The notes under the pieces were generated by a model. It was not told where the DNA came from. It was given only the letters and a program-made list of their open reading frames with translations, and made no database searches. Of a stretch of DNA of 64,000 nucleotides, positions 5,993 to 43,393 are shown in pieces. Numbering within the stretch: the first letter of the stretch is position 1; the number at the start of each line of letters is the position of its first letter. A program made the position numbers and the translations under genes. The stretch is from the IMG/VR virus record IMGVR_UViG_3300024252_000004, positions 310,001 through 374,000 of that record. One strand, written 5' to 3'.

Positions 5993-6907
5993 ATGCACCT
6001 AACGTCAATAGAACAAATTGACCGAGAGACATTAGAGAAGTTATTCCAAAGAGCGGATTACTGGAAAAGAATAAGAACACAAAAGCTTACAACAATTAAG
6101 CCGCTTCAGGGCCGCTTATTGACAAACCTATTTTATGAGCCATCGACAAGGACTGCATCATCGTTCTTTGCGGCGGCTTCTTTTCTTGGTGCCTCTGTTA
6201 ATCAAATTACCAATGTAGCTTTCTCTTCTGTATCAAAAGGCGAAACGTTTGAAGACACCATTCTGACTCTCGCACAATACTCTGACGGAATTATCTTAAG
6301 GCACCCTGAGAAAGGGTACGCAGACTTAGCCGCCAGTGTGTCTCCTGTCCCCATCATTAATGCTGGGGATGGCACAGGTGAACACCCTACTCAGACGCTA
6401 CTTGATTTATATACAATATACTCAGAGCTTGGCAGGATAGATGACTTAGCTGTGGCAATGGTTGGTGATCTTAAAAATGGGCGAACAGTTCATAGTTTAA
6501 CTAAAGCGTTTGCAAAGTACGAAACAGAAACCGATCTTATTTTCATCTCTCCAGAAGAGCTTAAGATGCCCGAAGAGTATTGCGAAGTCTCTAAGGTTCT
6601 TGGGATACAAGAAACAGAAGATATGACTTCCGCAATGGAAAATAATCATATCGATGTACTGTATATGACTCGCATACAAAAAGAGCGCTTCAATAATCAA
6701 GAAGATTATAAAAGGTATCATGGCTGCTATGAGCTTACGCCAAAAGAAATGAAGCTCATGCCGGACGAATCATGTGTCCTTCATCCCTTGCCAAGGGTTG
6801 GGGAGATATCGTCAGAGGTTGATCACGACCCAAGGGCTGCATACTTTCGTCAAGTAAAGAATGGTATGTTCATGAGAATGGCGATATTAGAGGCATTAAT
6901 TTCTTAA
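5993..6907 (+). CDS. pyrB: aspartate carbamoyltransferase catalytic subunit
   Basis: FYEPSTRT, SKGE, INAGDG, HPTQTLLD, YMTRIQKER, HPLPR. Confidence 0.97.
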   Translation: MHLTSIEQIDRETLEKLFQRADYWKRIRTQKLTTIKPLQGRLLTNLFYEPSTRTASSFFAAASFLGASVNQITNVAFSSVSKGETFEDTILTLAQYSDGIILRHPEKGYADLAASVSPVPIINAGDGTGEHPTQTLLDLYTIYSELGRIDDLAVAMVGDLKNGRTVHSLTKAFAKYETETDLIFISPEELKMPEEYCEVSKVLGIQETEDMTSAMENNHIDVLYMTRIQKERFNNQEDYKRYHGCYELTPKEMKLMPDESCVLHPLPRVGEISSEVDHDPRAAYFRQVKNGMFMRMAILEALIS

Positions 6908-6927
6908 TTTCCCACAAGATGGTATGT
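6902..6927 (+). promoter_or_regulatory. promoter-like motif B (TCTAA-N14-GKTATA), degenerate copy
   Basis: TCTTA-ATTTCCCACAAGAT-GGTATGT. Confidence 0.6.
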
Positions 6928-6992
6928 GGAGAAGAACGGTCCCCAAATGGATACCGGATTAAAATCTGGTGTTTCACAGAATAGGAAGCTAA

Positions 6993-7610
6993 ATGAGTTG
7001 TTACGAATGGGAAGAGGGCTCTATCAAAATACCTGTAAGCCATTGGCCTATGATTAAAAAGGCAGTTAGGGATGCCTATAACAAGCATCAAGAGGCGGAA
7101 TACATGGCGGCTCTTTCGGTGTATAATCGGGTATGCGCCGCCGGTAAGGGGCGACGCAATTTTGATTTTCGAGCAGCAGAGCGCAAGCTGAGCTATGAGA
7201 ATACGGATCGTTACCTTCTTCCCTGGCTAAAATTCAACGCATCTGAGAAACCGTTAAAACCGAAAAAGAAAGATTTTTCAAAAGCCACAAGCACCTCCAC
7301 TCTGTACTCATATGACGAAATCGTTATCGGCTTCGATAACAAGACCCGCTGTATTGAGTGGCGCGTCAGCGAAAACAACCGAGCAGTAGAGCGTGCTCAT
7401 GGGCACCCTGTCAGCAAAGCGTTCTTTTCGGAATTGAACAGGGTAAACTGGACCTCCAAAACTGGAGGCGTTTTCGTTGGCAATGATGAGTATAACAGAG
7501 AAGACTATAGTGCCGGTGGTGGTGGAAACTATATAACCAAATACTATGGTGGAATCGGAAAACGAGAAGCTGGTTTTAGTTCAAAACGTTCTTTGTTTAG
7601 CGGTTACTAA
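6993..7610 (+). CDS. hypothetical protein
   Basis: AGGA RBS; 205-aa ORF after motif B. Confidence 0.75.
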   Translation: MSCYEWEEGSIKIPVSHWPMIKKAVRDAYNKHQEAEYMAALSVYNRVCAAGKGRRNFDFRAAERKLSYENTDRYLLPWLKFNASEKPLKPKKKDFSKATSTSTLYSYDEIVIGFDNKTRCIEWRVSENNRAVERAHGHPVSKAFFSELNRVNWTSKTGGVFVGNDEYNREDYSAGGGGNYITKYYGGIGKREAGFSSKRSLFSGY

Positions 7611-7620
7611 AAGGATATTT

Positions 7621-8262
7621 ATGCCAGTTTATTACGGAATTCAAACAATCTTTATACACATTCCTAAATGTGCAGGAAGCGGAATGGCTCAAAAGCTATT
7701 CGCCCTTAACGAAAGTGGCGATGGGCTGAGTCAAGAGGTCGATAAGCATGAGAGTGCTTATGCTGTTGCAAATTATCTCAAGTACGATCTGTTCCTTCAG
7801 TTTTTCAAATTTGGATTTGTCAGGAACCCTTACGACAGAATGGTGTCGTGGTTCCATTACTACCAGAAACTATGGAAAAATCCAGACGAAGAACCATGCA
7901 GTCAAGATTGCATTGATCGGTTTCTTGAAATGGATTTTGATACATGGATCAAATCCCTTAAGAGGCATGAGGAAGGCGGGTGTCGTTCAGAAACTGCATG
8001 TCCGTTTCACTTTATCGCCAACCAGTATCAATATTTGATCTGGAGGGATGGAAGAATCTTTGTGGATTTTGTTGGTAAGGTTGAGAATATCGATGAAGAC
8101 TGGAGTTATGTTTGCGAAAAGGTTGGCCTTCCTCAAGAGAAGCTGGATGTATCCAATAGATCTGATAGGGAAGACTATCGAACTTATTACACGGAAGAAA
8201 CTAAGGCTATTGTCACAGCGCAATATGAAAAAGACTTAGAATATTTTGATTACTCATTCTGA
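7621..8262 (+). CDS. sulfotransferase family 2 protein
   Basis: 5'PSB FIHIPKCAGS, 3'PB FVRNPYDRMVS, C-terminal YEKDLEYFDYSF. Confidence 0.9.
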   Translation: MPVYYGIQTIFIHIPKCAGSGMAQKLFALNESGDGLSQEVDKHESAYAVANYLKYDLFLQFFKFGFVRNPYDRMVSWFHYYQKLWKNPDEEPCSQDCIDRFLEMDFDTWIKSLKRHEEGGCRSETACPFHFIANQYQYLIWRDGRIFVDFVGKVENIDEDWSYVCEKVGLPQEKLDVSNRSDREDYRTYYTEETKAIVTAQYEKDLEYFDYSF

Positions 8263-8273
8263 GAGGTAACATC

Positions 8274-8585
8274 ATGGAAGATACTGTAGGGCATATTCGC
8301 CACATCAACTACATGGTCCGCAATTTAGAGCGTGAGTTTGTGTTCTCGGATGGGTCTGGGCCAAAAATTATGATCGAAGACTATTGTTCTAAAAATTGGT
8401 CTTATGATCCTGATTCGAAAAAAGTGACCATTTCATTTGTGGGGGGATACTGGAATTCTTTTGAAGTGTTAGATGTGGCAAAAGGATCAGAGGTCACTCT
8501 TTTTTCTGTCAAATATGACACTGACACGCACAATTCTTATTTGGCCGTATCTAACCATAAGGAAAGCCATGAACAGGTTGACTAA
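8274..8585 (+). CDS. hypothetical protein
   Basis: GAGGT RBS. Confidence 0.65.
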   Translation: MEDTVGHIRHINYMVRNLEREFVFSDGSGPKIMIEDYCSKNWSYDPDSKKVTISFVGGYWNSFEVLDVAKGSEVTLFSVKYDTDTHNSYLAVSNHKESHEQVD

Positions 8586-9270: not shown

Positions 9271-9284
9271 ATGCTTCGAAATTT

Positions 9285-9310
9285 TCTAAAATTCCTGTAG
9301 GACGTTATAG
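9285..9310 (+). promoter_or_regulatory. promoter-like motif B
   Basis: TCTAA-AATTCCTGTAGGAC-GTTATAG, intergenic. Confidence 0.7.
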
Positions 9311-9353
9311 GTTTTCGAAGCGATACTTCAACCCTTAACCAAGGAAATTTAAC

Positions 9354-9596
9354 ATGGGTTTCAATAGAGTTTCGACCAACAAGCCGTGCGACAAGCACTT
9401 CTGTTTTTTCATTCAGGACTTTCGGGAAGGTGATTCCGTTTACGTCATGGTTAATAGGCAGCGCGTCCGAGGGCGAGTTGTGGCAGTTAACAAGCGTGAG
9501 AACGTAGTTCTGTGGGAGGATGGCGATGGTGTTATCAGCCGCTCAGTTCTTGACGAGTTCTCATTCCTCGGACCTTTCGACAGTGAGTGGGTCTGA
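9354..9596 (+). CDS. small protein, possibly SH3/KOW-like beta barrel
   Basis: FREGDSVYV..VRGRVVAV pattern; AAGGA RBS. Confidence 0.6.
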   Translation: MGFNRVSTNKPCDKHFCFFIQDFREGDSVYVMVNRQRVRGRVVAVNKRENVVLWEDGDGVISRSVLDEFSFLGPFDSEWV

Positions 9597-9613
9597 GAAC
9601 ACCAAGGAGATAG

Positions 9614-9859: not shown

Positions 9860-9913
9860 TTTCTTATCCTTATTTTGGATTAGTAAAACAAGTTGAGTAT
9901 CATTAATTAACGA

Positions 9914-9920
9914 TACTAAT
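9914..9920 (+). promoter_or_regulatory. promoter-like motif A (TACTAAT), putative late promoter
   Basis: TACTAAT in an AT-rich gap, 39 nt before ATG 9953. Confidence 0.65.
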
Positions 9921-9952
9921 ATAAAATTGATAAAACTGAAAAAGGAGTTTAA

Positions 9953-15212: not shown

Positions 15213-15615
15213 GGGGGCGTTTTGGATTCGACCGGGTAACAGATAGGAATAGTGCAAGCCGATCAAGGTAACTCAGATCGTTATAAGCGTTACAAAAAAC
15301 AAACTAGTTGACGACTATTCATTCGTGTACGCAAACGCAGGCAGAGGCTTCGGCGCTCCTGTAGTAGCATACGCCTAATTCCGATTTAGGCATGTGGACT
15401 CTGTGTTCCATATATCCAAACACAGATAAGTGGTTGAACGCACTGACATAAACATTGTTCAAAAATGGAGTAGCCCGAAAGGGAGGAGGCGTCTATCATT
15501 TGGCGTCAGGGGATAAAATGAATACTTTGCCTATTTAGAGAAATGGGATAAGCTTGTGAACGACTTGAAATTGACGTTATGCGACACGAGGGTTCGACTC
15601 CCTCCGCCTCCACCA
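15213..15615 (+). ncRNA. ssrA: tmRNA
   Basis: 5' GGGGGCG..GGATTCGAC; 3' GAGGG-TTCGACT-CCCTC-CGCCTCC-A-CCA with G3.U alanine identity pair; internal tag ORF 15310-15378 (DDYSFVYANAGRGFGAPVVAYA*). Confidence 0.93.
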
Positions 15616-19131: not shown

Positions 19132-19369
19132 ATTATTCGAGTCTATTAACAAGGTGAGAGAGATTAACTCGGAGCATTGTTATCACAAGGTTCTCGTGTT
19201 TGATGAGGATGGGCATTACGAAACTCTCATGATGACGGAACACGAGTTATCTGTAATTAGACAGCGCTCAGAGAGGAACCGTGACGAGGAGCTTGTTCCT
19301 AAGTGGCATGACAAGGCTTATGTTTCTGCTGTTTTTTCGGTAAAGAGTCTATTCGCCAAAGTTTTCTAA
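19121..19369 (+). CDS. hypothetical protein
   Basis: GGAG RBS. Confidence 0.65.
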   Translation: MIGKLFESINKVREINSEHCYHKVLVFDEDGHYETLMMTEHELSVIRQRSERNRDEELVPKWHDKAYVSAVFSVKSLFAKVF

Positions 19370-19390
19370 ATTTCCCATAAGATGTTATAG
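19365..19390 (+). promoter_or_regulatory. promoter-like motif B, facing an antisense gene
   Basis: TCTAA-ATTTCCCATAAGAT-GTTATAG. Confidence 0.7.
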
Positions 19391-19408
19391 GATGACGTAG
19401 CCTTTGTT

Positions 19409-20335
19409 TTACGCGATTGAAGCCCACCAAGCTTCGGCGTCAAAGTTCTCATCTTCATCGGCTAATGGCAATTCTTCCGAATCATCAGGCGTAGGCGCCT
19501 GCTGCTCAATAAGGGAAGCAATTGCCATTTGTGCTGTACCGGTAATGAATTCAAGGTTTGGCAGATAAAGAGTCTTCATGAACTTCTCGGCAGGAGCTTC
19601 AACAGCGAGCCATAGAAGCATAGAGATACCAAAGTCTATTGCGGAGACTGTCAAGCCTCCAATTCCAAGACCTGCGAAATATCCCAATACTGTCGGCATC
19701 AATAGGAGGATATCTTTAAACCCGTCAAGAAGATTGACGACAAAAGAAATTCCTTCGTCCCACAGTAAGCTGCCAGATTTTGTAAGTTCTACAACGGTTT
19801 TGAGTTCGACTGGAGACTCGGAATACTCTTTAGCTTTGCTCATCATTTTTGCAGGCTGTAGTGTGTCCATCCAGTTAAGGCCAACGTCACCAGATTTACC
19901 CTGTACTTTTTTGAATTCCTGAAAGCCATAATACACATTCTTAATGGCTATTAAGAAACTGAATAGTGGAGCAGCTTTGCCGAGCAGAGCCATAGCTCCT
20001 GCTTCTTTAACAAAGAAATCCTCTGATGTCATATTCATATTTGACATTACAACCCTAAGCTTCTCAGCAGAATCTTTAATATCTTCAGGGTCAGCTTCTT
20101 TTAGCGCCGCTGCATCTTTAAGGTTTTTTGCAGCTTCAACGAGGTATACTATAGCTTTAGTTTGCACCTGAGTTTCGTGAGGACGTTCGATCTCATTGAG
20201 AACTGCTTTCCACGCCTCAAGGTCTCCGCCAACGATATTTGCAGACTTGATTAGCAAGTGCGTAAGCTCGTCGGCTTCGCGGTTAAGGTTGGCTTCTTTT
20301 AGGATATCAATAAGGTATTTAAGTTCTTTGTCCAC
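19409..20335 (-). CDS. putative late/virion protein with hydrophobic helices and an N-terminal 'L..L...L.......AD' helix
   Basis: AGGAG RBS; TACTAATAAAA on the minus strand at 20358-20368. Confidence 0.8.
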   Translation of the reverse strand: MDKELKYLIDILKEANLNREADELTHLLIKSANIVGGDLEAWKAVLNEIERPHETQVQTKAIVYLVEAAKNLKDAAALKEADPEDIKDSAEKLRVVMSNMNMTSEDFFVKEAGAMALLGKAAPLFSFLIAIKNVYYGFQEFKKVQGKSGDVGLNWMDTLQPAKMMSKAKEYSESPVELKTVVELTKSGSLLWDEGISFVVNLLDGFKDILLLMPTVLGYFAGLGIGGLTVSAIDFGISMLLWLAVEAPAEKFMKTLYLPNLEFITGTAQMAIASLIEQQAPTPDDSEELPLADEDENFDAEAWWASIA

Positions 20336-20369
20336 TGACTGCTCCTAAGCATAAAGGTTTTATTAGTAA

Positions 20370-21494
20370 ATGAATATAATTCAAGCCAGTAATGCTAACG
20401 TAGTAAGGGTTGCGGAGTATTTCCTACCAAAGGAAATTACAAATCAAAACTTAATAATAGCAGGTGGGTTTGCTACGTGGCTGCTATATTTGCATAAGAC
20501 CGTAGAAGATTGGGATAAGTTTTTTGCAGACTTAGATGTGAGTCTCATAAATCTTGAGGATAAACGGTTAAAGGATGAAGCGACAAAAGGTATTGCGAAA
20601 TTTGGAGATATAGATATCTGGATTCCGGAGAACCATTCTTTAAGAAAGATGAAAATAATCACAAGTCAGGAGCTTTATCCCTTTGGCCTTAAAGAAAACG
20701 CAGGACTTGTGGAGAAAAGTCTTGCTTCCGAGAAATCATTTGAGAAAAGCTTCGGCATTTCCTCTGACCTTCTGAAGGTTAGCAGATTCGCACACACATA
20801 TAGGCTTGAGCATACAGTTAAACTTTTAGGAAAAATAGCGGTTCCGTCAGTGTTCGGCTTGTTTGAGCCAATTGTAATTCCGTATAGAAAGCGAATTAAA
20901 ATGAGGAATGCTTTTCAGATTATAAGAAGAACCTGTGATTCGTTAGAGGAAGTTTTTTCTACATTTGATTTTCACCATACAAGAGCAGCCTACTACAATG
21001 GCTTACTACACTTTACAAAAAAAGCTGAGAGGACTTTCGAAGAGAAGACAATCTTTCCGACAAAGAGTTTCCTTGAGCGACACGATAGCATATCTATTAA
21101 CTCTGCCTGTAGAGCATTTAAGTATATGGAGAGGTACGGATTTGGCTTCTCAGAAGACTTGGCAGATAAGATTGCGGACCTGTATCTTCAAGTTGGAATA
21201 GCAGAGGATACTGCGGATTATGTTGGCCCTCCAAAATATGCCATCATCAATTTATTCAATGCAACGAATCTCACCCCAGAGTATGATCCAGATTATTTAA
21301 TCTTTTTTTCAGAGATCACTCCAGAAACCTTGAGTAAGGTTAAAGGTATTTATCTTAAAAGATTTCTAACATCATTTAAGACATTTTCGAGAATGTCATG
21401 CTTTAAAGATGAGTATATAGGTTTGTTGCTATGTTGCGACATGGAAGAAATAAGTAAAGTAATCGAGAGGCGACTATATGAACAATCCGACTGA
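20370..21494 (+). CDS. Pol-beta superfamily (poly(A)/CCA-adding-like) nucleotidyltransferase
   Basis: IIAGGF, GDIDIW, FSTFDF, RAFKY..YGF motif set. Confidence 0.7.
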   Translation: MNIIQASNANVVRVAEYFLPKEITNQNLIIAGGFATWLLYLHKTVEDWDKFFADLDVSLINLEDKRLKDEATKGIAKFGDIDIWIPENHSLRKMKIITSQELYPFGLKENAGLVEKSLASEKSFEKSFGISSDLLKVSRFAHTYRLEHTVKLLGKIAVPSVFGLFEPIVIPYRKRIKMRNAFQIIRRTCDSLEEVFSTFDFHHTRAAYYNGLLHFTKKAERTFEEKTIFPTKSFLERHDSISINSACRAFKYMERYGFGFSEDLADKIADLYLQVGIAEDTADYVGPPKYAIINLFNATNLTPEYDPDYLIFFSEITPETLSKVKGIYLKRFLTSFKTFSRMSCFKDEYIGLLLCCDMEEISKVIERRLYEQSD

Positions 21495-21813: not shown

Positions 21814-21862
21814 TACTAATATCATGAAGCTCATGTGAATACCCAAATCTGGAGACTATCAC

Positions 21863-26553: not shown

Positions 26554-28113
26554 GTGCGTAAGCTTGCAGACTTAGAAGTTACAGAGAAGACAGATCCTGC
26601 TACCGGAAATAAAATCCGTATTAGCACGACTGCTCGTCTTGCGTTGAGAATTATGTTTCCAAAGTTTACTGAAGAAAGGAATGCGAGACTAAATGATCGA
26701 ATGGCATTCATGTTCAGTAATTCAGCAGGCAACGTTGTTCACCGTTTCAAATTAGGGAACAAAGATACCGGAGCATGGCGCCCAGCGGAACCAGATTCTG
26801 GTGAACAGAATAATAGAGAAGTTGCTGAAATTAGGTCAGGCCCAGGCGGAGACTTTTTCTTCATTTCTGCTATTAGGCAGGGATACATTGATATCTTAAC
26901 ATTACAAGATAATTGGAAGCAGGGAAAGCCTAATCAAGGTGGATCAAAAGGTGCTGGCGCAGGAGCCGGTGATGGAGATGTATCTTTGGCGAGTCTGAAT
27001 ATCGACATGAGTATATTCGGAGCTACTAATAAAACGAATTTGGACAGAAACAGGAGACATAACATGTCAGCATTGCGCATTCTTGCAGATTTAGCAAACA
27101 AGTTGGACAGTTTTGGTGAGACCAAGGCTGCTGATGAAGTAACCAAGATGATAGAGAAGAGAGCTAGGTGGCCTTTTGGAAAGGCGGACGAAGAGGAAGA
27201 ATTTCCTGCTGCCCCTCCAGTCCCTAAGCCTCCTGTGTCTCCACAGTCTTCTCCATTTTTAAGAGGAACAATTCCTCCTGCGCCGCCTATGAACCCTGTT
27301 GTTACGACCAGTCCGGAAGGTTTCAGCGATGCTCCAGTTGCTGAACCAGCAGAGTCAAGAGTAGTTGGAAAGCTTGGTCCGATTAGGCCAGACAAAGATC
27401 CTTACTCTTACGAATTCCTTCCTTCCGAAGGTGTCTTCAGAGTTTCCAGCTACACTTATGGGCCAGGAGCGGCCCCTAACCCAAGGGCAGAGAGAGCCGT
27501 TGGCGCACATATTACAAGAGAAAATGCAAGAGCTTGGGCTGTATTGTCCGAGTATGTTCCAGAAGGGGACAAGTCCCCTTCCGAAGGGAGACATCTTCTC
27601 ACAGAGTCTACAGGTGATCCTGCAAGAGACTGGAAAGAAGCACAGCTTCAGTTTGCTGGCTGGGTTAACTCAGGACACTTTGGTACTGAACTTCAGAAGA
27701 AGTTTAGACTTGCAGACCCGGGTATGCCAATGCGTCAGCTTATGGATGCAGAGCTTTCTCCAGAGAGTGCGGGATTCCTTGTTGAAAGGTTTGAGGCAAT
27801 GATTGCTGGAAATGTTCTTTCGGATCTAAAAGATCCTGAGACTCTCCTCAGATATGCTCTTGAGCTTCAGAACTATGCTCATCTTGCTAACAGGGCAAGG
27901 GCAGTAGGTCAGCAGTCAATGAGAGAATCTGAGACGGTCATGTCTCCGGGTGGATACCCATCATCATACCCATCATCATCAGAGGCTGAAGATTTCACAC
28001 TGGCATCTATGGACTCAATAGAGGATATAAGAAAGAAGGCATCTGCTAACGTAGATAGGCTTGCAGCACTTTTCACAGTCCCAGGTGGAAGCGGTCCTTT
28101 CGGAAGGGACTGA
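26554..28113 (+). CDS. putative late/virion protein; nested in-frame start at 27064
   Basis: GAGGTG RBS then GTG (MRKLA); TTCTAATAATA at 26520; internal TACTAAT 27024 + AGGAG + ATG 27064. Confidence 0.8.
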   Translation: MRKLADLEVTEKTDPATGNKIRISTTARLALRIMFPKFTEERNARLNDRMAFMFSNSAGNVVHRFKLGNKDTGAWRPAEPDSGEQNNREVAEIRSGPGGDFFFISAIRQGYIDILTLQDNWKQGKPNQGGSKGAGAGAGDGDVSLASLNIDMSIFGATNKTNLDRNRRHNMSALRILADLANKLDSFGETKAADEVTKMIEKRARWPFGKADEEEEFPAAPPVPKPPVSPQSSPFLRGTIPPAPPMNPVVTTSPEGFSDAPVAEPAESRVVGKLGPIRPDKDPYSYEFLPSEGVFRVSSYTYGPGAAPNPRAERAVGAHITRENARAWAVLSEYVPEGDKSPSEGRHLLTESTGDPARDWKEAQLQFAGWVNSGHFGTELQKKFRLADPGMPMRQLMDAELSPESAGFLVERFEAMIAGNVLSDLKDPETLLRYALELQNYAHLANRARAVGQQSMRESETVMSPGGYPSSYPSSSEAEDFTLASMDSIEDIRKKASANVDRLAALFTVPGGSGPFGRD

Positions 28114-29690: not shown

Positions 29691-29710
29691 GCCAATTTAG
29701 AATGGAGCAG

Positions 29711-29739
29711 AAACAAGGAGGGCTTAGCCTTCCTTGTTT
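29711..29739. terminator. intrinsic terminator
   Basis: AAACAAGGAGGGC/GCCTTCCTTGTTT stem. Confidence 0.8.
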
Positions 29740-29756
29740 GCGTTAGAGCATATTTT

Positions 29757-29782
29757 TCCAAATTTCCCACAGGGTGGTATAA
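29757..29782 (+). promoter_or_regulatory. promoter-like motif B
   Basis: TCCAA-ATTTCCCACAGGGT-GGTATAA just after the terminator. Confidence 0.7.
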
Positions 29783-29856
29783 GGGAGCATGTCCGTAGCT
29801 CTTAGTAGTTGCCTTGTATTCGCTTCGGTACTATTATCGCTCATGGAGGAATTTAC

Positions 29857-30867
29857 ATGTTGTTATCCGCAGATGTTGTAGTGGGGCTCGCTTGGGGCGA
29901 TGAAGCAAAAGGAAAGATCACCTCAGCCTTGGCAGCTACAGGGCAGTACGACGCCGTGGCTCGCTGGGCCGGAGGCAATAACGCAGGCCATACGGTCTAC
30001 GTCAATGGCGAAAAATACAAAACACACCTTGTTCCAAGCGGCGTATTCCACGGAATGCTTTCCATCGTTGGTCCCGGCTGTGTATTGCATCCAGAAGAAT
30101 TTGAAAAAGAATTGGCTTACCTCGCAGGACACGGATTCGATACCTCTCTTGTGAAGGTATCTCCGAATTGCCACATTGTTCAAGACGAGCATATTGAGTT
30201 TGACAAGCAGAACCTTGCAAAGAAGCTTGGCACAACCTCAAAAGGTATTGCACCGAGTTACGCAGCTAAGGCGGCAAGAACAGGTCTTCTTGCCAAAGAC
30301 TATTACGAAGGCAGTGACATCCTATGGGACGGTCAGCTTAGCGGTGTATTATTGTGTGAAGGAGCGCAGGGGGCTTGGTTAGATATTGATCACGGGAATT
30401 ATCCCTATGTGACCTCAAGCATTACACTTGCCTATGGAGCTTGCAGTATAGGCTTCGCACCACAGCTCATTAAGAGCATCTGGGGCGCTGCCAAAATTTA
30501 TGACACAAGAAGCGGAGAAGATCCTATTTTTCCTGCGTCACTACTTGATGACCCTATGCTGTCAAAGGTTGGGGAAATTGGGGCCGAATATGGTGTGACC
30601 ACAGGGCGCAGAAGAAAGGTAAATTGGCTTGATGTTGATATGCTGATTAAGTCTATCAATTTGACTGGATGCACACACGTTGTTGTTAGCAAATGTGATG
30701 TATTGGAAGAGGCCGGAGTTTACAGGATGTATTGTAGAGGGATTCAGAACGAGCTTTCTGAGTTCGAAAGCATTACCGATATGACCGGAGTGCTGGAGAC
30801 TCTTCTTAGAAAGAATTGTTCCCTTCTCAAGAGAGTGATCTTTTCCTCTTCACCGGAGAATATATGA
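29857..30867 (+). CDS. purA: adenylosuccinate synthetase (short form)
   Basis: GLAWGDEAKGK, GGNNAGHT, EGAQG, YPYVTSS, GVTTGRRR; GGAGG RBS. Confidence 0.95.
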   Translation: MLLSADVVVGLAWGDEAKGKITSALAATGQYDAVARWAGGNNAGHTVYVNGEKYKTHLVPSGVFHGMLSIVGPGCVLHPEEFEKELAYLAGHGFDTSLVKVSPNCHIVQDEHIEFDKQNLAKKLGTTSKGIAPSYAAKAARTGLLAKDYYEGSDILWDGQLSGVLLCEGAQGAWLDIDHGNYPYVTSSITLAYGACSIGFAPQLIKSIWGAAKIYDTRSGEDPIFPASLLDDPMLSKVGEIGAEYGVTTGRRRKVNWLDVDMLIKSINLTGCTHVVVSKCDVLEEAGVYRMYCRGIQNELSEFESITDMTGVLETLLRKNCSLLKRVIFSSSPENI

Positions 30868-34634: not shown

Positions 34635-34638
34635 TTTT

Positions 34639-34664
34639 TCTAAGCTACTCGTAGGAGGTTATAG
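34639..34664 (+). promoter_or_regulatory. promoter-like motif B
   Basis: TCTAA-GCTACTCGTAGGAG-GTTATAG. Confidence 0.65.
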
Positions 34665-34721: not shown

Positions 34722-35795
34722 ATGGCAACAATTAAAAGTACACTTGATTCATTACTATCTATGCCGAATGACCAGTCGATTCTGATTATCTCGCCGCACG
34801 GAATGGGCAAGTCAAGCTTAGTTAAACAGGCATCTAAAATGTTAGGTGCTGAATTTCATGATGTTAGACTTTCTCAGTGTGAGGTTGGAGACATCAAAGG
34901 TCTGCCATTCCTAAATGAGGAAACACGGACTACGGAGTTCTTCAAACCACGTTGGTGGCCAAGAGATATGAGTAGCTCTGGCTACCTATTTTTCGATGAG
35001 CTTAACCGAGCTAACAATGAGGTGCAGCAGGCTGTTTTCGAGATCGTTCTTGATAGAAGGCTTGATGGAGATTATCTTCCTGACGGATGGAGAGTTGTTG
35101 TTGCAATCAACGGCGACGAAAGATATCAGGTCAGCGAGCTTGATCCAGCCCTTTTTGACAGATTCTATATCGTTGATTTCCATCCGGAAGTAAACGAGTG
35201 GCTTGACTGGGCAGAGGAAGCCGGCATTCACGGCTCTATCCTACAGTTCATTCAGTCTAGCCCAGAGTATCTTGACCCTCCAAAGGATCTGAAGCAGGGT
35301 ATGGTATATCCTTCTCGTAGAAGTTGGGATAAGTTTAATCAGGCTATGACTCATCTTGGTCTTTGGGAGTCAAAGGATCCTGGCAAAATCACAGAGTTGT
35401 GTCTTGGTTGGATTGGCAGAGCGGCAGGAATTAGATTTACCGAATTCTATCTCAAGGATTTCAAGCTTATCAGCGGTGATGACATTCTGAATAAATTTGA
35501 TGAGATCAGAGAGGATCTTGACAGAATGAAGGGTGACCCTTCGGCTATGGCGACAATTGCGAGAGGTCTTGGTAGAGCTATCTCTACTATGGACAAGGAC
35601 ATTCTGCCTGAGCAGTTGGAGAACCTGAAGAAGGCTCTGAGAATACTTCCGAGAGAGATTGCGTCATCCGTATGGATGGAAGCTGGTCGATCAAAGTCAA
35701 TTAGAAAGCATCTTTCTCAGATGAGGAAAACCGATCCTGATTTCGTGAAATTTGTAACAAAGCTTTATGCGACCAACAGAAAAAAGGATGCGTAA
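34722..35795 (+). CDS. MoxR-like AAA+ ATPase
   Basis: PHGMGKS, LFFDELNRA, LDPALFDRF, PSRRSW. Confidence 0.9.
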   Translation: MATIKSTLDSLLSMPNDQSILIISPHGMGKSSLVKQASKMLGAEFHDVRLSQCEVGDIKGLPFLNEETRTTEFFKPRWWPRDMSSSGYLFFDELNRANNEVQQAVFEIVLDRRLDGDYLPDGWRVVVAINGDERYQVSELDPALFDRFYIVDFHPEVNEWLDWAEEAGIHGSILQFIQSSPEYLDPPKDLKQGMVYPSRRSWDKFNQAMTHLGLWESKDPGKITELCLGWIGRAAGIRFTEFYLKDFKLISGDDILNKFDEIREDLDRMKGDPSAMATIARGLGRAISTMDKDILPEQLENLKKALRILPREIASSVWMEAGRSKSIRKHLSQMRKTDPDFVKFVTKLYATNRKKDA

Positions 35796-37070
35796 ATGAG
35801 TGAAATGGAAAAGACAGAGCTGGAAGAAAACGAAGAGAAGGTAAGGCTTCAAAAGGAGTTGCTTGCGGCAAGAAGGGTTATGTCCCGAGAGGGGCTTGAG
35901 AGACTTGAAATTGGAATCTCAAGATTAACTTTATCTTTTCCACTCTTTTACATTCCCCTCATTAACCTTAGAAAGGTTGAGTCATGGAACATTCCAACGA
36001 TGGGTGTTGGTCCGGTCAATAAGATTGAACTCGGACTATACTATAACCCCGAGTTTACGCTTAGTCTAAATCCTATTGAGTTGCGAGCAGTATTACAGCA
36101 TGAAGCCATGCACATTCTGCTTCAGCACCTTACCAGAGGTAGAGACTTCGGTTCCAATTTCAAGATGTATAACATTGCGGCTGATTTGACCATCAATCCC
36201 AAGCTCGAAGGTATTCCGAGTTGGGCTTATTTCCCCGAAAAGGAAGGTCTTCCTTCGAATGAATCGGCAGAACTTTACTACAAGCTCCTAAAAGAGCGAC
36301 GTGAAGAGATGACGAAGAGAATGAAGAAGCAGATGGAGGGTATGACTGACGAACAAATCGCTGATGCATTCTTTAAGTCCCTTGAGGGAGAGGCACTTGA
36401 CGACCACTCTATGTGGGAAGATATGACTCAGACTCAGAAGGATATCATCAAAGAGAAGATTCGTAACTTATCAGAAGAGGCTATGAGGGCGCAGGATGCT
36501 GTCGGTTGGGGAAAGGTTCCGGGGAATTTGCATGAAGAGATTATGGCGGCGAATAAGCCGTTAGTAAATTGGAAAAGAGAGCTTAAGTTCTTTATTGGGC
36601 AGGTTGTCTCATGCGGGAGGAAGAGTACAAGGCTGCGTCCCAACAGGCGCTACAAGTATCTCCAGCCTGGAACGAAAAGGAGTTATACCAGTAAGCTTCT
36701 AATCGCATTGGATTGCTCCGGCTCAGTATCTGATAAAGAGCTTCAGATGTTTATTGATGAAGTGACGGGAATGGTAGGTAAGGTTCAGGTTGATGTAATT
36801 CCATTCGATGCGGTATGTCATGGAGAACCTCAGAAATTCACAAGGAAAAATGCCAGCATCAAAGTGCATGGCAGAGGCGGAACCGATTTCGGTCCCCCTA
36901 TCAGAATGGCTGATGATCTTAAGTATGATGGACTAATCGTAATGACAGATGGAGAGTGCAGTTTCCCTGTCGCTCCACGCTGTAGAATGATGTGGGTTCT
37001 GTCGCGCAATTCGTCATGGGCTGACCCGCCCCCTTACGGAAGGGTTATACAGCTTAATGAATTAGGTTGA
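35796..37070 (+). CDS. DUF2201-type metallopeptidase + VWA domain protein
   Basis: QHEAMH, NIAADL.IN, DCSGS MIDAS, GRGGTDF, MTDG. Confidence 0.88.
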   Translation: MSEMEKTELEENEEKVRLQKELLAARRVMSREGLERLEIGISRLTLSFPLFYIPLINLRKVESWNIPTMGVGPVNKIELGLYYNPEFTLSLNPIELRAVLQHEAMHILLQHLTRGRDFGSNFKMYNIAADLTINPKLEGIPSWAYFPEKEGLPSNESAELYYKLLKERREEMTKRMKKQMEGMTDEQIADAFFKSLEGEALDDHSMWEDMTQTQKDIIKEKIRNLSEEAMRAQDAVGWGKVPGNLHEEIMAANKPLVNWKRELKFFIGQVVSCGRKSTRLRPNRRYKYLQPGTKRSYTSKLLIALDCSGSVSDKELQMFIDEVTGMVGKVQVDVIPFDAVCHGEPQKFTRKNASIKVHGRGGTDFGPPIRMADDLKYDGLIVMTDGECSFPVAPRCRMMWVLSRNSSWADPPPYGRVIQLNELG

Positions 37071-37074
37071 GTAC

Positions 37075-37108
37075 AAAGGGGTAGAGACTTCCGGGTCTCT
37101 ACCCCTTT
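37075..37108. terminator. intrinsic terminator
   Basis: AAAGGGGTAGAGAC/GTCTCTACCCCTTT 14-bp stem. Confidence 0.85.
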
Positions 37109-37155
37109 CCCCGCTTGAGGGCGGGGTGAAAAACAATACATTTACGGAGTGAAAA

Positions 37156-39996: not shown

Positions 39997-40316
39997 CATT
40001 TGTTAACCTAATATTGTTTATTCTTATTGGCACAGGTATAACTAATGTTGTGGTTAACGCATCAATCCTTGACAGGGTTAGAGATATGTTGACAAGTAAG
40101 TCTGATTTTCTGTCCGGCTTATTGGGATGCATGCTTTGCTCTGGTTTTTGGGTAGGAGCCTTACTATCACTTGGCTACACAGGCATTGGCTTAATTGCTG
40201 GTGGCGCAGTAGTTAGTTTACTGAGTTATACATTTGGGAGTGTTATGGAATATCTCCATGCATCAATCACTGTAAAGGAAGCTCAGGTTGAATACATAGA
40301 TGATGAGGAAGAATAA
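39993..40316 (+). CDS. DUF1360-like membrane protein
   Basis: Hydrophobic helices with LLGCMLCSGFWVG. Confidence 0.65.
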   Translation: MTFVNLILFILIGTGITNVVVNASILDRVRDMLTSKSDFLSGLLGCMLCSGFWVGALLSLGYTGIGLIAGGAVVSLLSYTFGSVMEYLHASITVKEAQVEYIDDEEE

Positions 40317-40807
40317 TGAGATATTCGGTTCCCGAAAAAGTAATGAGATTATTGTGGGAAGATGACAAATTTTTTAATGTGACCTGCAAGTCGGCCAGGG
40401 TTTCTGTAAATTGTTTTCCAAAGAATGACCAGTGGGTTGATGAAAGAGGTTTTAATATGTCTTTTGCGCTTGCCGGATACGGTCCAAAAGACCTTTTGGT
40501 ACAAATCGCATCGAGCACCTTGACTATTTCCAGTAACGGAATTGCTGAGGTATCACCTGAGCAGCCAGTTATTAAAGAGAGCGATGATGCTATGGATGAA
40601 TATACAAAAACTGCTAAGCAGGTTATTCAGAAGGGCGCCATTTCGAGAGGAATTGCTCGCAGAAGCTTCAAAGTTAGTCATGCTATTTCAGATGCATTTG
40701 ATTGTTATAAAGCTATGGCCAGCATTGAGCATGGCTTGCTTCACATAGTAATCCCACCCAAAGAATCCATTGGGGTAAAAGTTGTGGATATCATGGAGAA
40801 CGGATGA
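40316..40807 (+). CDS. small heat shock protein (Hsp20/IbpA-like)
   Basis: FALAGY, RGIARRSF, ASIEHGLLHI.IP. Confidence 0.88.
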   Translation: MRYSVPEKVMRLLWEDDKFFNVTCKSARVSVNCFPKNDQWVDERGFNMSFALAGYGPKDLLVQIASSTLTISSNGIAEVSPEQPVIKESDDAMDEYTKTAKQVIQKGAISRGIARRSFKVSHAISDAFDCYKAMASIEHGLLHIVIPPKESIGVKVVDIMENG

Positions 40808-41058
40808 TGTTATCGATCAGAGAATTAGTCGAAGGTGTGGTGTCCTCAATTGTTGACAACACAGACACGGTAGAGATTGTCGAGGAAGAAACTGACAGTG
40901 GACTTCTGTTCACGATTACTGTAGGCAAAGACGATGTCGGTAAGCTTATAGGTAAGGAAGGTCGCGTGGCAAGCGCCCTCCGCACAGTTGTGAAGGCAGC
41001 GGGTGCAAAGAAGGGTCAGAGAGTCCTCGTTAACGTAAATAATAAACCGTTAGGGTAA
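40804..41058 (+). CDS. khpA: single KH-domain RNA-binding protein (KhpA-like)
   Basis: IVDNTDTV..DDVGKLIGKEGRVASALRTVV. Confidence 0.85.
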   Translation: MMLSIRELVEGVVSSIVDNTDTVEIVEEETDSGLLFTITVGKDDVGKLIGKEGRVASALRTVVKAAGAKKGQRVLVNVNNKPLG

Positions 41059-41063
41059 GGATT

Positions 41064-41267
41064 ATGATGATGTCTGAAAGCAAACTCGATGTCTTGACGA
41101 AGAAGATCATCAAGATGTATAAGAACTACGGTTTAGATGTATCGAATATGTCTGATGAAGAAATTTCTCGAATTCGCGAGAAGTATGAAAAGATGGGATC
41201 GAATATAGATAACGACTTGAAAAAGTCTGAAAAGTATTCAGGTAATTTTTCAGACCATATTCTATAA
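41064..41267 (+). CDS. small hypothetical protein
   Basis: AAGGA RBS. Confidence 0.6.
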   Translation: MMMSESKLDVLTKKIIKMYKNYGLDVSNMSDEEISRIREKYEKMGSNIDNDLKKSEKYSGNFSDHIL

Positions 41268-41302
41268 ATGTTTTATTGCCTGCTGTATTGGTTGTGTAAA
41301 AT

Positions 41303-41779
41303 ATGAAAGTTTGCAAAAAATGTGGCGAACCAAAGCCATTAGAAAATTATTACCGTTCTGGTAAAGGAAAAAGAAGAGGAACCTGTGTTGGTTGCTACAG
41401 AGATCATAGAAAGGTTTCTGACCATAAACCCGAAAGTAGATTTAAAAAATACAAGAGGGACGCACGCCGCAGAAGTTTAGAGTTTAAACTTAGCAGAGAA
41501 CAGTTCTTTTCCTTTCACGGTAAGTCTTGCCGATACTGCGGAGTAAGCGTTACTCCGATTAGTTTAGACAGAATAGACAACAACCAAGGCTACTTGATAG
41601 AAAATGTTGATGCGTGTTGTCATTGGTGCAATAGATTAAAGCACATTTTTGGCGAGACAGATTTTCTAACGCATATTGAAAAGATATGTAATTATCAAAT
41701 AGGAAAAAATGATGATAAACAAGAAAGTCTTAGCCAAAAAGTTAGCGAAAAGCACACTCCTAACACAGAAAGAGGCTGA
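41303..41779 (+). CDS. His-Me finger (HNH-like) endonuclease
   Basis: KVCKKC.E.KPL..C..C; CRYCG..SLDRIDNNQGY..NV..CC.WCN.LK. Confidence 0.82.
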   Translation: MKVCKKCGEPKPLENYYRSGKGKRRGTCVGCYRDHRKVSDHKPESRFKKYKRDARRRSLEFKLSREQFFSFHGKSCRYCGVSVTPISLDRIDNNQGYLIENVDACCHWCNRLKHIFGETDFLTHIEKICNYQIGKNDDKQESLSQKVSEKHTPNTERG

Positions 41780-42014
41780 TCAGGTAGTGGATAAACTCTT
41801 CAGCATTGTGCTTGAAGAACTGAAGAAGGGACAGGACATCTCAATCGTAGGATTTGGAAAGTTTTATTTGTACGAGCATAAGTCACGTCCTGTTCGAAAT
41901 CCAAAAAATCAAGAAGAGATGATGCTTAAGCCTTATAAGTCAATGAGGTTTAAGACGAGCAACGTTGTGAAAAAACTACTAAAAGATCTGTCTTATAGTG
42001 AAGATTCAGAATAA
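41709..42014 (+). CDS. HU/IHF DNA-binding protein
   Basis: NKKVLAKKLA, GFGKF, RPVRNPK, RFK. Confidence 0.92.
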   Translation: MMINKKVLAKKLAKSTLLTQKEADQVVDKLFSIVLEELKKGQDISIVGFGKFYLYEHKSRPVRNPKNQEEMMLKPYKSMRFKTSNVVKKLLKDLSYSEDSE

Positions 42015-42035
42015 GACTGAAGAGGTAGGATTACT

Positions 42036-43337
42036 ATGGCAACAGACAGCTCAACTAAATTGACAAAATTTGTAAGGTCACAGACCATCGTAACCGCAGA
42101 CTTCGCCAACGCAATGTATGGCGGACTGTACGGCACGACGGAAGGTGATGCATTGGACGCAGATGATCCTCGCGTAGCAGGACACGTCCATGATGGGGAG
42201 AATGCCGATGGTCATTCTCAGAAAGTACATCTTGTAAATCACGTTACCGACCAGTTAACGAATTCGAACTTAGCTGATGATGCGGTTACGAAAAGAAATG
42301 TTGCAAGTTTCACAGATGCCTCAGATGCCATTCCGGAATCGGAAGTCATCGATGGGACAACGTATTACTACCTTGACATCGATCAACCCATTGGTTATTC
42401 GACACTACAACTCTCGGCAGATGGAGGCTCGGTTTCAGGCGATGGTGCCGGAGACATTGAAGCAGATTCATCTGAAGATACGGTTAATATCAAAGCTGGT
42501 TCCGGAATTGATATTCTCACAGACTTAACAAATGATTCGCTTACAATTAGCAGCACTGCACAGAGTTTTGGAATTGTGGCCATGGGAGCAACGTCCGGAG
42601 AGACGGGACAGTTTTCAGGAACAGGCCCTCTTGAGTCGGATCTTGCGAGAGATACCGTAACTCTTGAAGCTGGTTATGGTATGGACATCACTGGTGACGC
42701 ATCAGGTGACATAGTTAAGTTTAGAGCACAACACTCTATGACGTATCAGCTTCTTGGTCTTGACGCTTGGGTTAATGGTAATTCGCCGGCCGGATGGGGC
42801 ACAGTACAGACAAGACATTATACAGATGGTGGCGGCAGTGATTTGTCATATACCTATCAGATCGTTGCTGATGATGATTATGTTTATGCGACTGTACCTA
42901 TTCCGGAGAATGCATTTGGAGATAGGCCAGATAAGGTTGTGTTTAAATCATACTTCATTGCAGCAGATCAGGGAACAGCTTATCTCGCAGCACTAAATCC
43001 TGATCCTACTTTTACAATCAGTTTGGAAATAGGTTCTAATGAGACCCAAGCAGACAACGTTGATAAAGGAACGATTGAAGATGACCAAGATATTACCGCT
43101 TCCGGTATGAATCTTTGGACAACAGGTATCGCGGTGGCTTCCACTGCTGTAACAGGGCCTAACAGATATTACATTCTGACTTGGCCGGAGCAGACTTTAG
43201 GCAAAAGTGGTGTCGGACTTTTAAGTATAAGAATGACTGGAACTACAGGTTTCTCATCTGGCATTGGTGACTTTGATAATGGTACTAACAGGGGTCGGGC
43301 TGAATTTATCAAAGCAGAACTAACCTGGTATTACTAA
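42036..43337 (+). CDS. probable virion structural/tail fibre protein
   Basis: GHVHDG..GHS metal-knot-like motif; repeated D-T-V..AG.G.DI units. Confidence 0.65.
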   Translation: MATDSSTKLTKFVRSQTIVTADFANAMYGGLYGTTEGDALDADDPRVAGHVHDGENADGHSQKVHLVNHVTDQLTNSNLADDAVTKRNVASFTDASDAIPESEVIDGTTYYYLDIDQPIGYSTLQLSADGGSVSGDGAGDIEADSSEDTVNIKAGSGIDILTDLTNDSLTISSTAQSFGIVAMGATSGETGQFSGTGPLESDLARDTVTLEAGYGMDITGDASGDIVKFRAQHSMTYQLLGLDAWVNGNSPAGWGTVQTRHYTDGGGSDLSYTYQIVADDDYVYATVPIPENAFGDRPDKVVFKSYFIAADQGTAYLAALNPDPTFTISLEIGSNETQADNVDKGTIEDDQDITASGMNLWTTGIAVASTAVTGPNRYYILTWPEQTLGKSGVGLLSIRMTGTTGFSSGIGDFDNGTNRGRAEFIKAELTWYY

Positions 43338-43367
43338 GATATCTTTGCCTACGAATGAGCGAAGTTT

Positions 43368-43393
43368 TCTAAATTTCCCACAAGGGGTTATAA
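43368..43393 (+). promoter_or_regulatory. promoter-like motif B
   Basis: TCTAA-ATTTCCCACAAGGG-GTTATAA. Confidence 0.7.

What the first reader, a model, noticed from the sequence alone, without database searches (positions are those of the whole stretch)
6902..43393. Second promoter class TTTTCTAA-N14-G(T/G)TATA with fixed spacing, and a candidate cognate sigma factor in the window
Seen: six copies at or just after gene ends (6902, 9285, 19365, 29757, 34639, 43368), all with an exact 14-nt spacer. Four share the spacer start ATTTCCCA(C/T)A. They head operons such as purA, moxR and the ftsK-sbcCD block, and one directly follows a terminator. The upstream box resembles the sigma28 CTAAA box, but the downstream box does not match GCCGATAA. 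Inference: an early/middle promoter read by a phage sigma, perhaps 51194-51961, which has regions 2 and 4.
Basis: partly seen in the sequence, partly recalled or inferred. Interest (0 to 1): 0.62.

Follow-up and report, generated by a model that had tools for sequence, protein, structure and literature searches.

The report
Phage-specific promoter class in jumbo phage
A 27-base motif repeated about 48 times in an uncultivated 395-kb phage is very probably a phage-specific promoter for its non-structural genes and tRNAs, but whether the phage's own sigma factor reads it is not shown.

Summary
The motif is real and far from chance. The window holds 4 exact and 2 degenerate copies, all with a 14-nt spacer. 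A weight matrix finds 47 copies on the gene strand and 1 on the other strand of the 395,127-bp phage genome, and none in shuffled sequence.

All copies lie between 141.8 and 353.4 kb. They sit just upstream of small ORFan cassettes, tRNA genes and DNA, nucleotide or translation genes. In two cases the downstream box ends 13-14 nt before a mature tRNA 5' end. A pyrimidine-purine step 7-8 nt after GTTATA, which was not used to find the sites, marks a likely start site. This places the boxes at -35..-28 and -13..-8. The promoter reading is well supported (about 0.85-0.9).

ORF 51194-51961 is a genuine, divergent sigma-70-family protein, and no phage RNA polymerase was found. The link between this sigma and the motif is unproven:
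- The sigma family is widespread, with nearly invariant DNA-reading helices.
- The motif occurs only in this phage.
- A second motif, TACTAATA, precedes the endolysin gene and several giant ORFs of unknown function, and is conserved at orthologous sites in relatives. It is an equally good or better candidate target for the sigma.

Verdict: a new member or variant of a known kind.

The parts
6899..6926 (+). Degenerate class-2 copy ATTTCTTA-N14-GGTATG (19.9 bits). The next ORF with a Shine-Dalgarno sequence starts at 6993.
9282..9309 (+). Class-2 promoter-like site TTTTCTAA-N14-GTTATA (42.7 bits). Predicted start about 9317. The downstream ORF starts at 9354.
19362..19389 (+). Class-2 site (47.0 bits). 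It points into the 3' end of the - strand gene 19409-20335, so it would give an antisense read-through towards 20370.
29714..29736 (+). Terminator-like hairpin followed by a T-run, directly upstream of site 29754.
29754..29781 (+). Class-2 variant TTTTCCAA-N14-GGTATA (33.0 bits), 28 nt before purA (29809-30867).
34636..34663 (+). Class-2 site (43.5 bits), 59 nt before the MoxR-type AAA gene (34722-35795) and the VWA/DUF2201 gene (35796-37070).
43365..43392 (+). Class-2 site (42.8 bits) heading 43439-43783, 43776-44150, ftsK 44396, a DnaG-type Zn-ribbon protein 45433, sbcD 45984 and sbcC 47146. By read-through it could also reach the sigma gene.
51194..51961 (+). 255-aa divergent sigma-70-family protein with region 2, a disordered linker and a region-4 helix-turn-helix. 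It is the candidate reader.
49476..49483 (+). TACTAATA, the second (late-type) motif, 33 nt before the 294-aa gene that heads the 294-aa / PD-(D/E)XK nuclease / sigma / 464-aa gene run. It is conserved at the same place in three relatives.
53344..53350 (+). TACTAATg before the 2027-aa orphan gene. It is conserved in relatives but overlaps the end of the upstream ORF.
9914..9921 (+). TACTAATA 32 nt before a 70-aa ORF, in tandem downstream of class-2 site 9282.
20362..20368 (-). TACTAAT on the - strand, 26 nt before the - strand gene 20335..19409. The G001 orthologue has the same motif.
21814..21821 (+). TACTAATA 42 nt before the 316-aa gene (21863).
27024..27031 (+). TACTAATA 33 nt before an ATG with a Shine-Dalgarno sequence (349-aa reading).

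Best explanation
The motif (consensus aaTTTTCTAA-AtTTCyCAyAGGAy-GTTATA-Gr) is a phage-specific promoter. The host core RNA polymerase uses it to transcribe the phage's pre-late genes: an array of small ORFan cassettes, most tRNA clusters, and DNA, nucleotide and translation-related operons. Transcription most likely starts at a purine 8 nt after GTTATA. The two boxes then lie at -35..-28 and -13..-8, the geometry of a sigma-70-family promoter. The sequence matches no housekeeping or sigma-28 consensus, and no phage polymerase was found. The specificity is therefore most likely supplied by a phage-encoded sigma-type factor. The 255-aa sigma at 51194-51961, the only protein in the genome with a sigma region 2, is the leading single candidate. 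Shown: the motif family, its placement, its orientation and the sigma's identity. Inferred: the start site, promoter activity and the pairing with the sigma. The stated confidence of 0.4 is for the whole statement including the sigma pairing. The promoter part alone is about 0.85-0.9.
For: The motif family has 47 copies on + and 1 on -, with 0 in a shuffle, and is confined to 141.8-353.4 kb. A feature not used in the search supports a start site: a pyrimidine at +32 in 41/48 sites and a purine at +33 in 44/48 sites, counted from the first T of TTCTAA. The boxes end 13-14 nt before the mature tRNA-Ser and tRNA-Phe, 28 nt before tRNA-Gly, and 63 nt before tRNA-Met and tRNA-Tyr. The median distance to a start codon with a Shine-Dalgarno sequence is 45 nt, and 32/47 sites are within 100 nt against 38% of random positions. 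Sites follow terminator hairpins. Downstream genes are non-structural: PurA, MoxR/VWA, FtsK-SbcCD, SprT plus UvrD, a CCA-adding-type nucleotidyltransferase, a PP-loop ATPase, PTH2 and HNH. Canonical TTGACA-N17-TATAAT sites are not enriched: 61 against 54-71 in shuffles genome-wide, and 31 against 36.9 and 24 against 30.7 in the window scans. No RNA polymerase genes were found. Sigma identity rests on Sigma70_r2 at 26.8 bits (cut-off 24), TIGR02937 aligned over residues 53-242, and fold matches to sigma A, H, 32, 28, S and B chains over about 230-240 aligned columns at probability 1.0. The sigma residue that aligns by eye (SigK alignment, E. coli sigma-70 recalled from memory) with the -12-reading Q437 varies (N/H/K/Y) inside an otherwise conserved helix, so specificity could differ between phages. 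Relative G001 has an analogous but different two-box cassette motif, CTCTAAAA..AGTAAyTAA, at 30 sites, all on the + strand.
Against: The sigma's region 2.4-like and 4.2-like helices are nearly invariant across at least 84 clusters, yet the motif exists only in this phage and is missing at the orthologous site in relatives whose sigma is 65-77% identical. The sigma gene itself lies downstream of a class-2 site. If the sigma were required for class-2 there would be no visible source of the first sigma molecules, because no housekeeping-type promoter was seen. The ORFan cassettes look like immediate-early genes, which would normally need the unmodified host enzyme. TACTAATA is a competing target for the same sigma.
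Confidence: 0.4

Rival explanations
1. Cascade model. Class-2 sites are the early or middle promoters and are read by the host holoenzyme at time zero. The reading may be helped or redirected by a phage factor such as the conserved 157-aa region-4-only protein, in the manner of T4 MotA/AsiA acting on a -30 box. The 255-aa sigma, made from the class-2 operon at 43365, then reads the conserved single-box TACTAATA promoters of late genes.
For: TACTAATA occurs 13 times on + and 2 on -, and 9 of the 13 + strand copies lie in the roughly 9% of the genome that is intergenic. It precedes the endolysin gene and giant orphan ORFs in the left 141 kb, which carries no class-2 site. TAyTAATA-type words are the most enriched intergenic words in relative G002. 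The motif is conserved at orthologous sites in L059, L062 and L063 and, on the - strand, in G001, matching the near-invariant sigma helices. The sigma gene lies in a class-2-headed run of genes, which gives a coherent early-to-late order. Tandem class-2 plus TACTAATA arrangements before single genes (230738/230808, 261646/261863, 9282/9914) look like two temporal classes. The variant TTTGCTAAA resembles the T4 MotA box (from memory).
Against: Class-2 lacks the A(-11)/T(-7) pattern of housekeeping -10 elements and has no TTGACA. It is species-specific, whereas housekeeping specificity is nearly universal. The host is unknown. TACTAATA has no visible -35 partner, although the sigma keeps a conserved region 4.
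Confidence: 0.3
2. The motif is the promoter of an unrecognised phage-encoded (possibly virion-delivered) RNA polymerase. The analogy is T7, T3 and SP6, where each phage carries many copies of its own roughly 20-nt promoter ending in TATAG.
For: The conservation is contiguous over about 27 nt and ends in TATAG/GG. The motif is species-specific, and the relative has a related but different version. Six orphan proteins of 1,444-3,218 aa have no family match.
Against: PF00940, PF00623 and PF00562 give no match. No NADFDGD-type motif and no T7-type motif A/B/C set occurs in any large ORF. There is no hairpin covariation of the N4 type. The pyrimidine-purine step lies 8 nt after the box, not at the G next to TATA. 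The phage encodes sigma-type proteins instead.
Confidence: 0.08
3. The motif is not a promoter. It could be a repeated recombination or regulatory cassette, an operator for a DNA-binding protein, or an RNA processing signal.
For: The cassette copies are embedded in longer repeats of 60-88 nt, which could spread by recombination. There is no transcript evidence.
Against: Strand bias is 47 to 1. The sites lie between terminators and genes, with no other conserved element in short intergenic regions such as 29691-29808. They sit immediately before tRNA genes. The two-box profile carries a start-site-like pyrimidine-purine step. There is no RNA or DNA hairpin covariation.
Confidence: 0.1

Closest known systems
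Promoters read by phage-encoded sigma-70-family factors (phiEco32 gp36, consensus AATGTA centred at -11.5, PMC12276001; SPO1 gp28 and gp33/34; from memory)
   Same: A phage without its own polymerase encodes a divergent sigma with sigma-2 and sigma-4 domains. The phage-specific promoters are unlike TTGACA/TATAAT. The -10 region rATGT(T)ATA resembles gp36's AATGTA.
   Different: Here the upstream box TTTTCTAA is strong and the spacer is itself conserved. About 48 copies include tRNA promoters. The pairing with the sigma is untested. The sigma has no relative among the 50,697 phage records of the GenBank-derived collection searched.
PeSL cassettes (promoter-early stem-loops) of T4-type phages (PMC2839356)
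   Same: An array of small ORFan genes at genome 143.5-158 kb. Each gene is bounded by a stem-loop and its own strong, nearly identical promoter. The same architecture is present in relative G001.
   Different: PeSL promoters are sigma-70-like; these are not. These cassettes also carry a palindrome of sigma-54-like -24/-12 boxes and a GGGG(T/A)GAAAA element.
T4 late promoter TATAAATA read by gp55 (from memory)
   Same: The second motif, TACTAATA, is a single -10-type octamer with 6 of 8 positions identical. It lies about 25-45 nt before start codons, including the endolysin gene, and is conserved across the phage lineage.
   Different: The candidate sigma here keeps a region 4. Neither a gp33 nor a clamp dependence is known. 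No gp55 homologue was sought.
Sigma-28 / FliA promoters TAAA-N15-GCCGATAA
   Same: The upstream box contains CTAAA.
   Different: The distance from TAAA to the downstream box is 13 nt, not 15-18 nt, and GTTATA does not match GCCGATAA. This is not a member.
T7-family single-subunit polymerase promoters
   Same: Many near-identical, species-specific copies of a contiguous motif ending in TATAG.
   Different: No such polymerase gene was detected, and the inferred start lies 8 nt downstream of the box.

Membership tests
Sigma-70 family protein (ORF 51194-51961) | Region 2 (core binding and -10 recognition) | tested here: met
   PF04542 scores 26.8 bits against a cut-off of 24 and 29.6 bits in the six-frame search. 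Region 2 aligns to SigK.
Sigma-70 family protein (ORF 51194-51961) | Region 4 helix-turn-helix | tested here: met
   The query alone is weak on PF04545 (12.9 bits). TIGR02937 aligns residues 53-242. Homologues carry PF04545 or PF08281. The AF2 model has a C-terminal helical bundle with pLDDT above 90, and its fold matches span full-length sigma chains.
Sigma-70 family protein (ORF 51194-51961) | Binds core RNA polymerase and directs initiation | not testable with these tools
   The host is unknown and no complex job was run.
Two-box sigma-70-family promoter (class-2 motif) | Two conserved boxes at fixed spacing, co-oriented with and upstream of genes | tested here: met
Two-box sigma-70-family promoter (class-2 motif) | Transcription start 5-9 nt after the downstream box | tested here: inconclusive
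   There is a pyrimidine-purine step at +7/+8 (41/48 and 44/48 sites). The tRNA 5' ends bound the start to within 13 nt of the box. No transcript data are available.
Housekeeping promoter TTGACA-N17-TATAAT | Match to both hexamers, with A at -11 and T at -7 | tested here: not met
   In the canonical frame the hexamers read TTTTCT and TTATAG. Canonical sites are not enriched anywhere in the genome.
Sigma-28 (FliA) promoter | TAAA-N15-GCCGATAA | tested here: not met
   Both the spacing and the downstream box differ (consensus from memory).
T7-type single-subunit polymerase promoter | A cognate single-subunit polymerase gene in the genome | tested here: not met
   PF00940 gives no match, but the control genomes cannot ring for this family. 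No motif A/B/C set was found.
PeSL regulatory cassette | Stem-loop plus strong early promoter flanking small non-essential ORFs in a hyperplastic region | tested here: met
   The arrangement is met. The promoter is not sigma-70-like, so this is an analogue rather than the same element.

The most novel reading that the evidence does not exclude
The phage runs a private, fast-evolving promoter code on the host core enzyme. A species-specific two-box promoter would be read from the first minutes by a phage sigma that is either packaged in the virion or paired with the conserved region-4-only protein as a split sigma. The ORFan cassettes would in addition carry convergent sigma-54-type -24/-12 boxes that recruit host sigma-54. 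This would be a three-layer transcription programme with no housekeeping-type promoter at all.
Probability: 0.12. Interest if true: 0.8.

Novelty: new variant of a known kind. Interest (0 to 1): 0.5.

Why it matters
Large uncultivated marine-type phages that encode sigma factors instead of polymerases are common in metagenomes: at least 84 protein clusters, on contigs up to 422 kb. Their transcription programmes are unknown. This genome offers a nearly complete, testable map:
- about 48 strong phage-specific promoters driving tRNAs, ORFan cassettes and metabolic operons;
- a lineage-wide late-type octamer, TACTAATA;
- two sigma-like proteins.

The map gives ready-made templates for in vitro pairing experiments. 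It also improves operon annotation of such phages.

Tried and rejected
- Megablast of 11 kb of the window, and tblastn of the sigma, against 50,697 phage records gave no match. The DnaE N-terminus finds only hits of about 32% identity or less, so no cultured relative or host could be named.
- A GroEL search in bacterial genomes gave one uncultured MAG at 45% identity, which says nothing about the host.
- Searches for a phage RNA polymerase were all negative: Pfam PF00940, PF00623 and PF00562, catalytic-motif regexes, PHROGs and Pfam on the giant ORFs, and a protein-atlas search of the 2027-aa protein.
- An N4-type promoter hairpin was rejected. Mutual information shows only sub-family signals and no compensatory pairs.
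- Rfam found only tRNA and tmRNA in the window and the cassette region.
- The G000 weight matrix and the exact pattern find no motif family in relatives G001-G004: the exact pattern has no match and the best single matrix hit is 24 bits. G001 orthologues of purA, moxR and the gene before ftsK have no G001-type motif upstream. G001 tRNA upstream regions show no shared motif. ATATATAAT in G001 is only weakly strand-biased and was not pursued.
- No sigma-54 gene or bEBP activator gene was found.
Full report
SETTING. The window is bases 310,001-374,000 of a single 395,127-bp IMG/VR virus record. CheckV rates it 100% complete, and its G+C content is 43.8%. Nearly all genes lie on the + strand. No related record exists among 50,697 deposited phage genomes, either at the DNA level or for the sigma protein.

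THE OBSERVATION. The exact pattern TTTTCTAA-N14-G[TG]TATA occurs four times in the window, against 0.00 expected. Coordinates are 1-3 nt off. The statements about the shared spacer start, the position at gene ends, the terminator before 29754 and the downstream purA, moxR-type and ftsK-sbcCD genes all hold.

In the whole genome the relaxed exact pattern TTCTAA-N14-G[TG]TATA occurs 16 times on the + strand and once on the - strand. A weight matrix built from these sites finds 47 + strand sites and 1 - strand site above 10 bits, and none in a shuffled genome. All sites lie between 141.8 and 353.4 kb. None lies in the left 141 kb or the last 42 kb.

ANATOMY. The spacer is itself conserved, in two sub-types: A-TTTCyCAyAGGAy and G(T/A)AACTCAyAGGAy. 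The element is therefore about 27 contiguous informative bases. A feature outside the matrix appears 7-8 nt after GTTATA: a pyrimidine in 41/48 sites, then a purine in 44/48 sites. This is the usual signature of a bacterial-type start site. If that purine is +1, TTTTCTAA spans -35..-28 and GTTATA spans -13..-8. There is no compensatory covariation that would indicate a hairpin.

WHAT LIES DOWNSTREAM. Three kinds of unit follow the sites.
- ORFan cassettes. Twelve sites form a regular array at 143.5-154.3 kb. Each precedes a small, G+C-rich ORF with a Shine-Dalgarno sequence 19-39 nt away. One precedes a roughly 370-nt unit with no ORF. Each unit ends in a hairpin.
- tRNA genes. The genome has 44 tRNA genes and a tmRNA, all on the + strand. 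Class-2 boxes end 13 nt before tRNA-Ser, 14 nt before tRNA-Phe, 28 nt before tRNA-Gly and 63 nt before tRNA-Met and tRNA-Tyr. The TGCTAA..GGTATA variant is the tRNA-associated sub-type. No translation signal is involved here, and the start must lie within 13 nt of the box. This is the strongest sequence-only argument for a promoter.
- Non-structural operons. The remaining sites head genes for PurA, MoxR/VWA, FtsK-SbcCD, SprT-UvrD, a phosphoesterase with a CCA-adding-type nucleotidyltransferase, a PP-loop ATPase, PTH2, an HNH endonuclease and others.

Site 19362 is an exception. It points into a real - strand gene, 19409-20335, which is conserved in relative G001 at E = 5e-20. It would therefore produce antisense RNA on its way to the + strand gene at 20370.

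WHO COULD READ IT. Housekeeping-type TTGACA-N17-TATAAT sites are not enriched in the genome or the window, and almost all of them lie inside genes. No RNA polymerase gene was found by Pfam or by catalytic motifs. Six orphan proteins of 1,444-3,218 aa remain unexplained.

The genome encodes exactly one protein with a sigma region 2, ORF 51194-51961. Its identity rests on these results:
- PF04542 scores above the curated cut-off.
- TIGR02937 aligns over residues 53-242.
- The AF2 model has mean pLDDT 79, with a disordered linker at residues 136-181.
- Fold matches are all sigma chains in holoenzyme structures, over about 230-240 aligned columns.

A second protein of 157 aa (genome 383920-384393, outside the window) has only a region-4 helix-turn-helix. 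It is more conserved than the sigma: 75% against 52% identity to relative G001.

COMPARATIVE EVIDENCE. The sigma belongs to a family of at least 84 clusters, all from metagenomes, on contigs up to 422 kb. Its region-2.4-like helix (KLSTFLxTHLxNKxISKLRS) and region-4.2-like helix (VGL[TS]GWAASMRLKKL) are nearly invariant. One position in the first helix varies (N/H/K/Y). My own by-eye alignment, via the SigK match and the E. coli sigma-70 sequence recalled from memory, places this position at Q437, the residue that reads -12.

The class-2 motif, by contrast, is private to this phage.
- A 17-base version of the pattern scanned over 2.9 million viral contigs found multi-hit contigs only from this phage (at least 99.9% identical). 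The other eight hits were singles, about the chance level.
- Relatives with 65% and 77% identical sigma have unrelated sequence at the site orthologous to 43365.
- The 335-kb relative G001 (sigma 52% identical) has the same cassette architecture. Its two-box motif is CTCTAAAA-AnATAT-N8-AGTAAyTAA, at 30 sites, all on the + strand and all inside its cassette region.

A SECOND MOTIF. TACTAATA occurs 13 times on the + strand and twice on the - strand. Nine of the 13 + strand copies fall in intergenic DNA. It lies 23-50 nt before start codons with a Shine-Dalgarno sequence. It precedes the endolysin gene and several giant orphan ORFs in the class-2-free left arm. It is the top intergenic word in relative G002. 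It is conserved at orthologous places while the flanks diverge: before the 293/294-aa gene that heads the operon containing the sigma gene (G000, L059, L062, L063), and on the - strand before the 308-aa gene (G000 and G001). It resembles the T4 late promoter TATAAATA (from memory). Class-2 and TACTAATA occur in tandem before some genes, as expected for two temporal classes.

WEIGHING. That class-2 is a promoter is well supported (about 0.85-0.9). Its geometry fits a sigma-70-family factor on the host core enzyme. Which factor reads it cannot be settled from sequence.

- The 255-aa protein is the only region-2 protein in the genome.
- It has two domains, and the promoter has two boxes.
- The promoter is not of the housekeeping type.
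- One specificity position in the sigma varies between phages.

- The sigma helices are invariant while the motif is private to this phage.
- TACTAATA is conserved across relatives and is an alternative target.
- The sigma gene lies inside a class-2-headed run of genes and directly behind a TACTAATA. This fits a cascade of class-2, then sigma, then TACTAATA better than a self-dependent class-2.

I give the pairing 0.4, the cascade rival 0.3, another or unknown phage reader about 0.1-0.2 (the unknown-polymerase rival alone is scored 0.08), and 'not a promoter' 0.1.

COMPARISON AND NOVELTY. Phage-encoded sigmas with private promoters are known, for example phiEco32 gp36 with AATGTA (PMC12276001) and, from memory, SPO1 and T4. 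Promoter plus stem-loop ORFan cassettes are also known (PeSLs, PMC2839356). A published survey of jumbo phages notes sigma factors in polymerase-less groups (PMC7824862). This case is a new variant: a new sigma family and a new consensus that also drives tRNA genes, in an uncultivated lineage.

LIMITS.
- Gene calls outside the tool outputs come from a simple longest-ORF script.
- The host is unknown.
- No transcript data could be obtained.
- Consensus sequences of T4, SPO1, sigma-28 and T7-type promoters are quoted from memory.

Noticed in passing
window 9914, 21814, 27024, 49476, 53344 (+), 20368 (-); genome-wide: A second promoter-like motif, TACTAATA. It lies 23-50 nt before start codons, precedes the endolysin gene and giant orphan ORFs, and is conserved at orthologous sites in relatives. 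It is probably the late class and a rival target of the phage sigma.
   Followed up: partly
genome 143.5-158 kb (L004:3400-18200); G001 258.8-285 kb: A PeSL-like array of about 16 small, G+C-rich ORFan cassettes. Each has a terminator hairpin, GGGGAGAAAA, a palindrome, TTTTCTCCCC-loop-GGGGTGAAAA and a class-2-type promoter. The same architecture, with different sequences, occurs in a relative whose sigma is 52% identical.
   Followed up: partly
genome 141.6-156 kb (L004:1600-16000); G001 258-285 kb: Sigma-54-like boxes TGGCAC-N5-TTGC[AT], often as face-to-face pairs on both strands: 7 on + and 4 on - in this phage, 5 and 4 in the relative, and 0 in shuffles. They are almost entirely confined to the cassette regions (one looser match in the relative lies outside). 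No rpoN or enhancer-binding-protein gene was found in the phage.
   Followed up: partly
genome 383920-384393 (outside window; L057): A 157-aa protein with only a sigma region-4 or LuxR-type helix-turn-helix. It is 75% identical in G001 and 69% in G002, so it is more conserved than the 255-aa sigma. It could be a late activator or the partner of a split sigma.
   Followed up: partly
genome 141080-141890 (L004:1080-1890): An approximately 800-nt non-coding stretch rich in short direct repeats (cataag, ggaa and cttaaacataaaa units), immediately before the first class-2 site. It could be an origin or a control region.
   Followed up: no
window 15213-15615; genome 159-326 kb: A phage tmRNA (Rfam 81 bits) with the unusual tag DDYSFVYANAGRGFGAPVVAYA, and 44 tRNA genes, all on the + strand. 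One tRNA at genome 302460 has anticodon CUA (an amber suppressor, labelled 'Pyl' by ARAGORN).
   Followed up: no
window 19362-20370: Class-2 site 19362 fires antisense through a conserved - strand gene (19409-20335) that has its own TACTAAT on the - strand. This is a possible case of temporal control by convergent transcription.
   Followed up: partly
window 60913-63999; genome 113807-116989: DnaE (Pol III alpha) is interrupted by an intein with Hint and LAGLIDADG domains. The ribonucleotide reductase large subunit also carries an endonuclease-like insert.
   Followed up: no
window 37071-37140: A terminator hairpin followed by CCCCGC-loop-GCGGGGTGAAAAAC, the same GGGGTGAAAA element as in the cassettes but without a class-2 box. 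Its function is unknown. The A-run lies 3' of the stem, so it is not a classical terminator.
   Followed up: no
window 53399-59482 and genome 42417-52073, 30770-36871: Giant orphan proteins of 2027, 3218 and 2033 aa have no Pfam or PHROG match; the protein-atlas search, run only on the 2027-aa protein, also found nothing. The 2027-aa gene is syntenic with the sigma gene in all relatives examined.
   Followed up: partly
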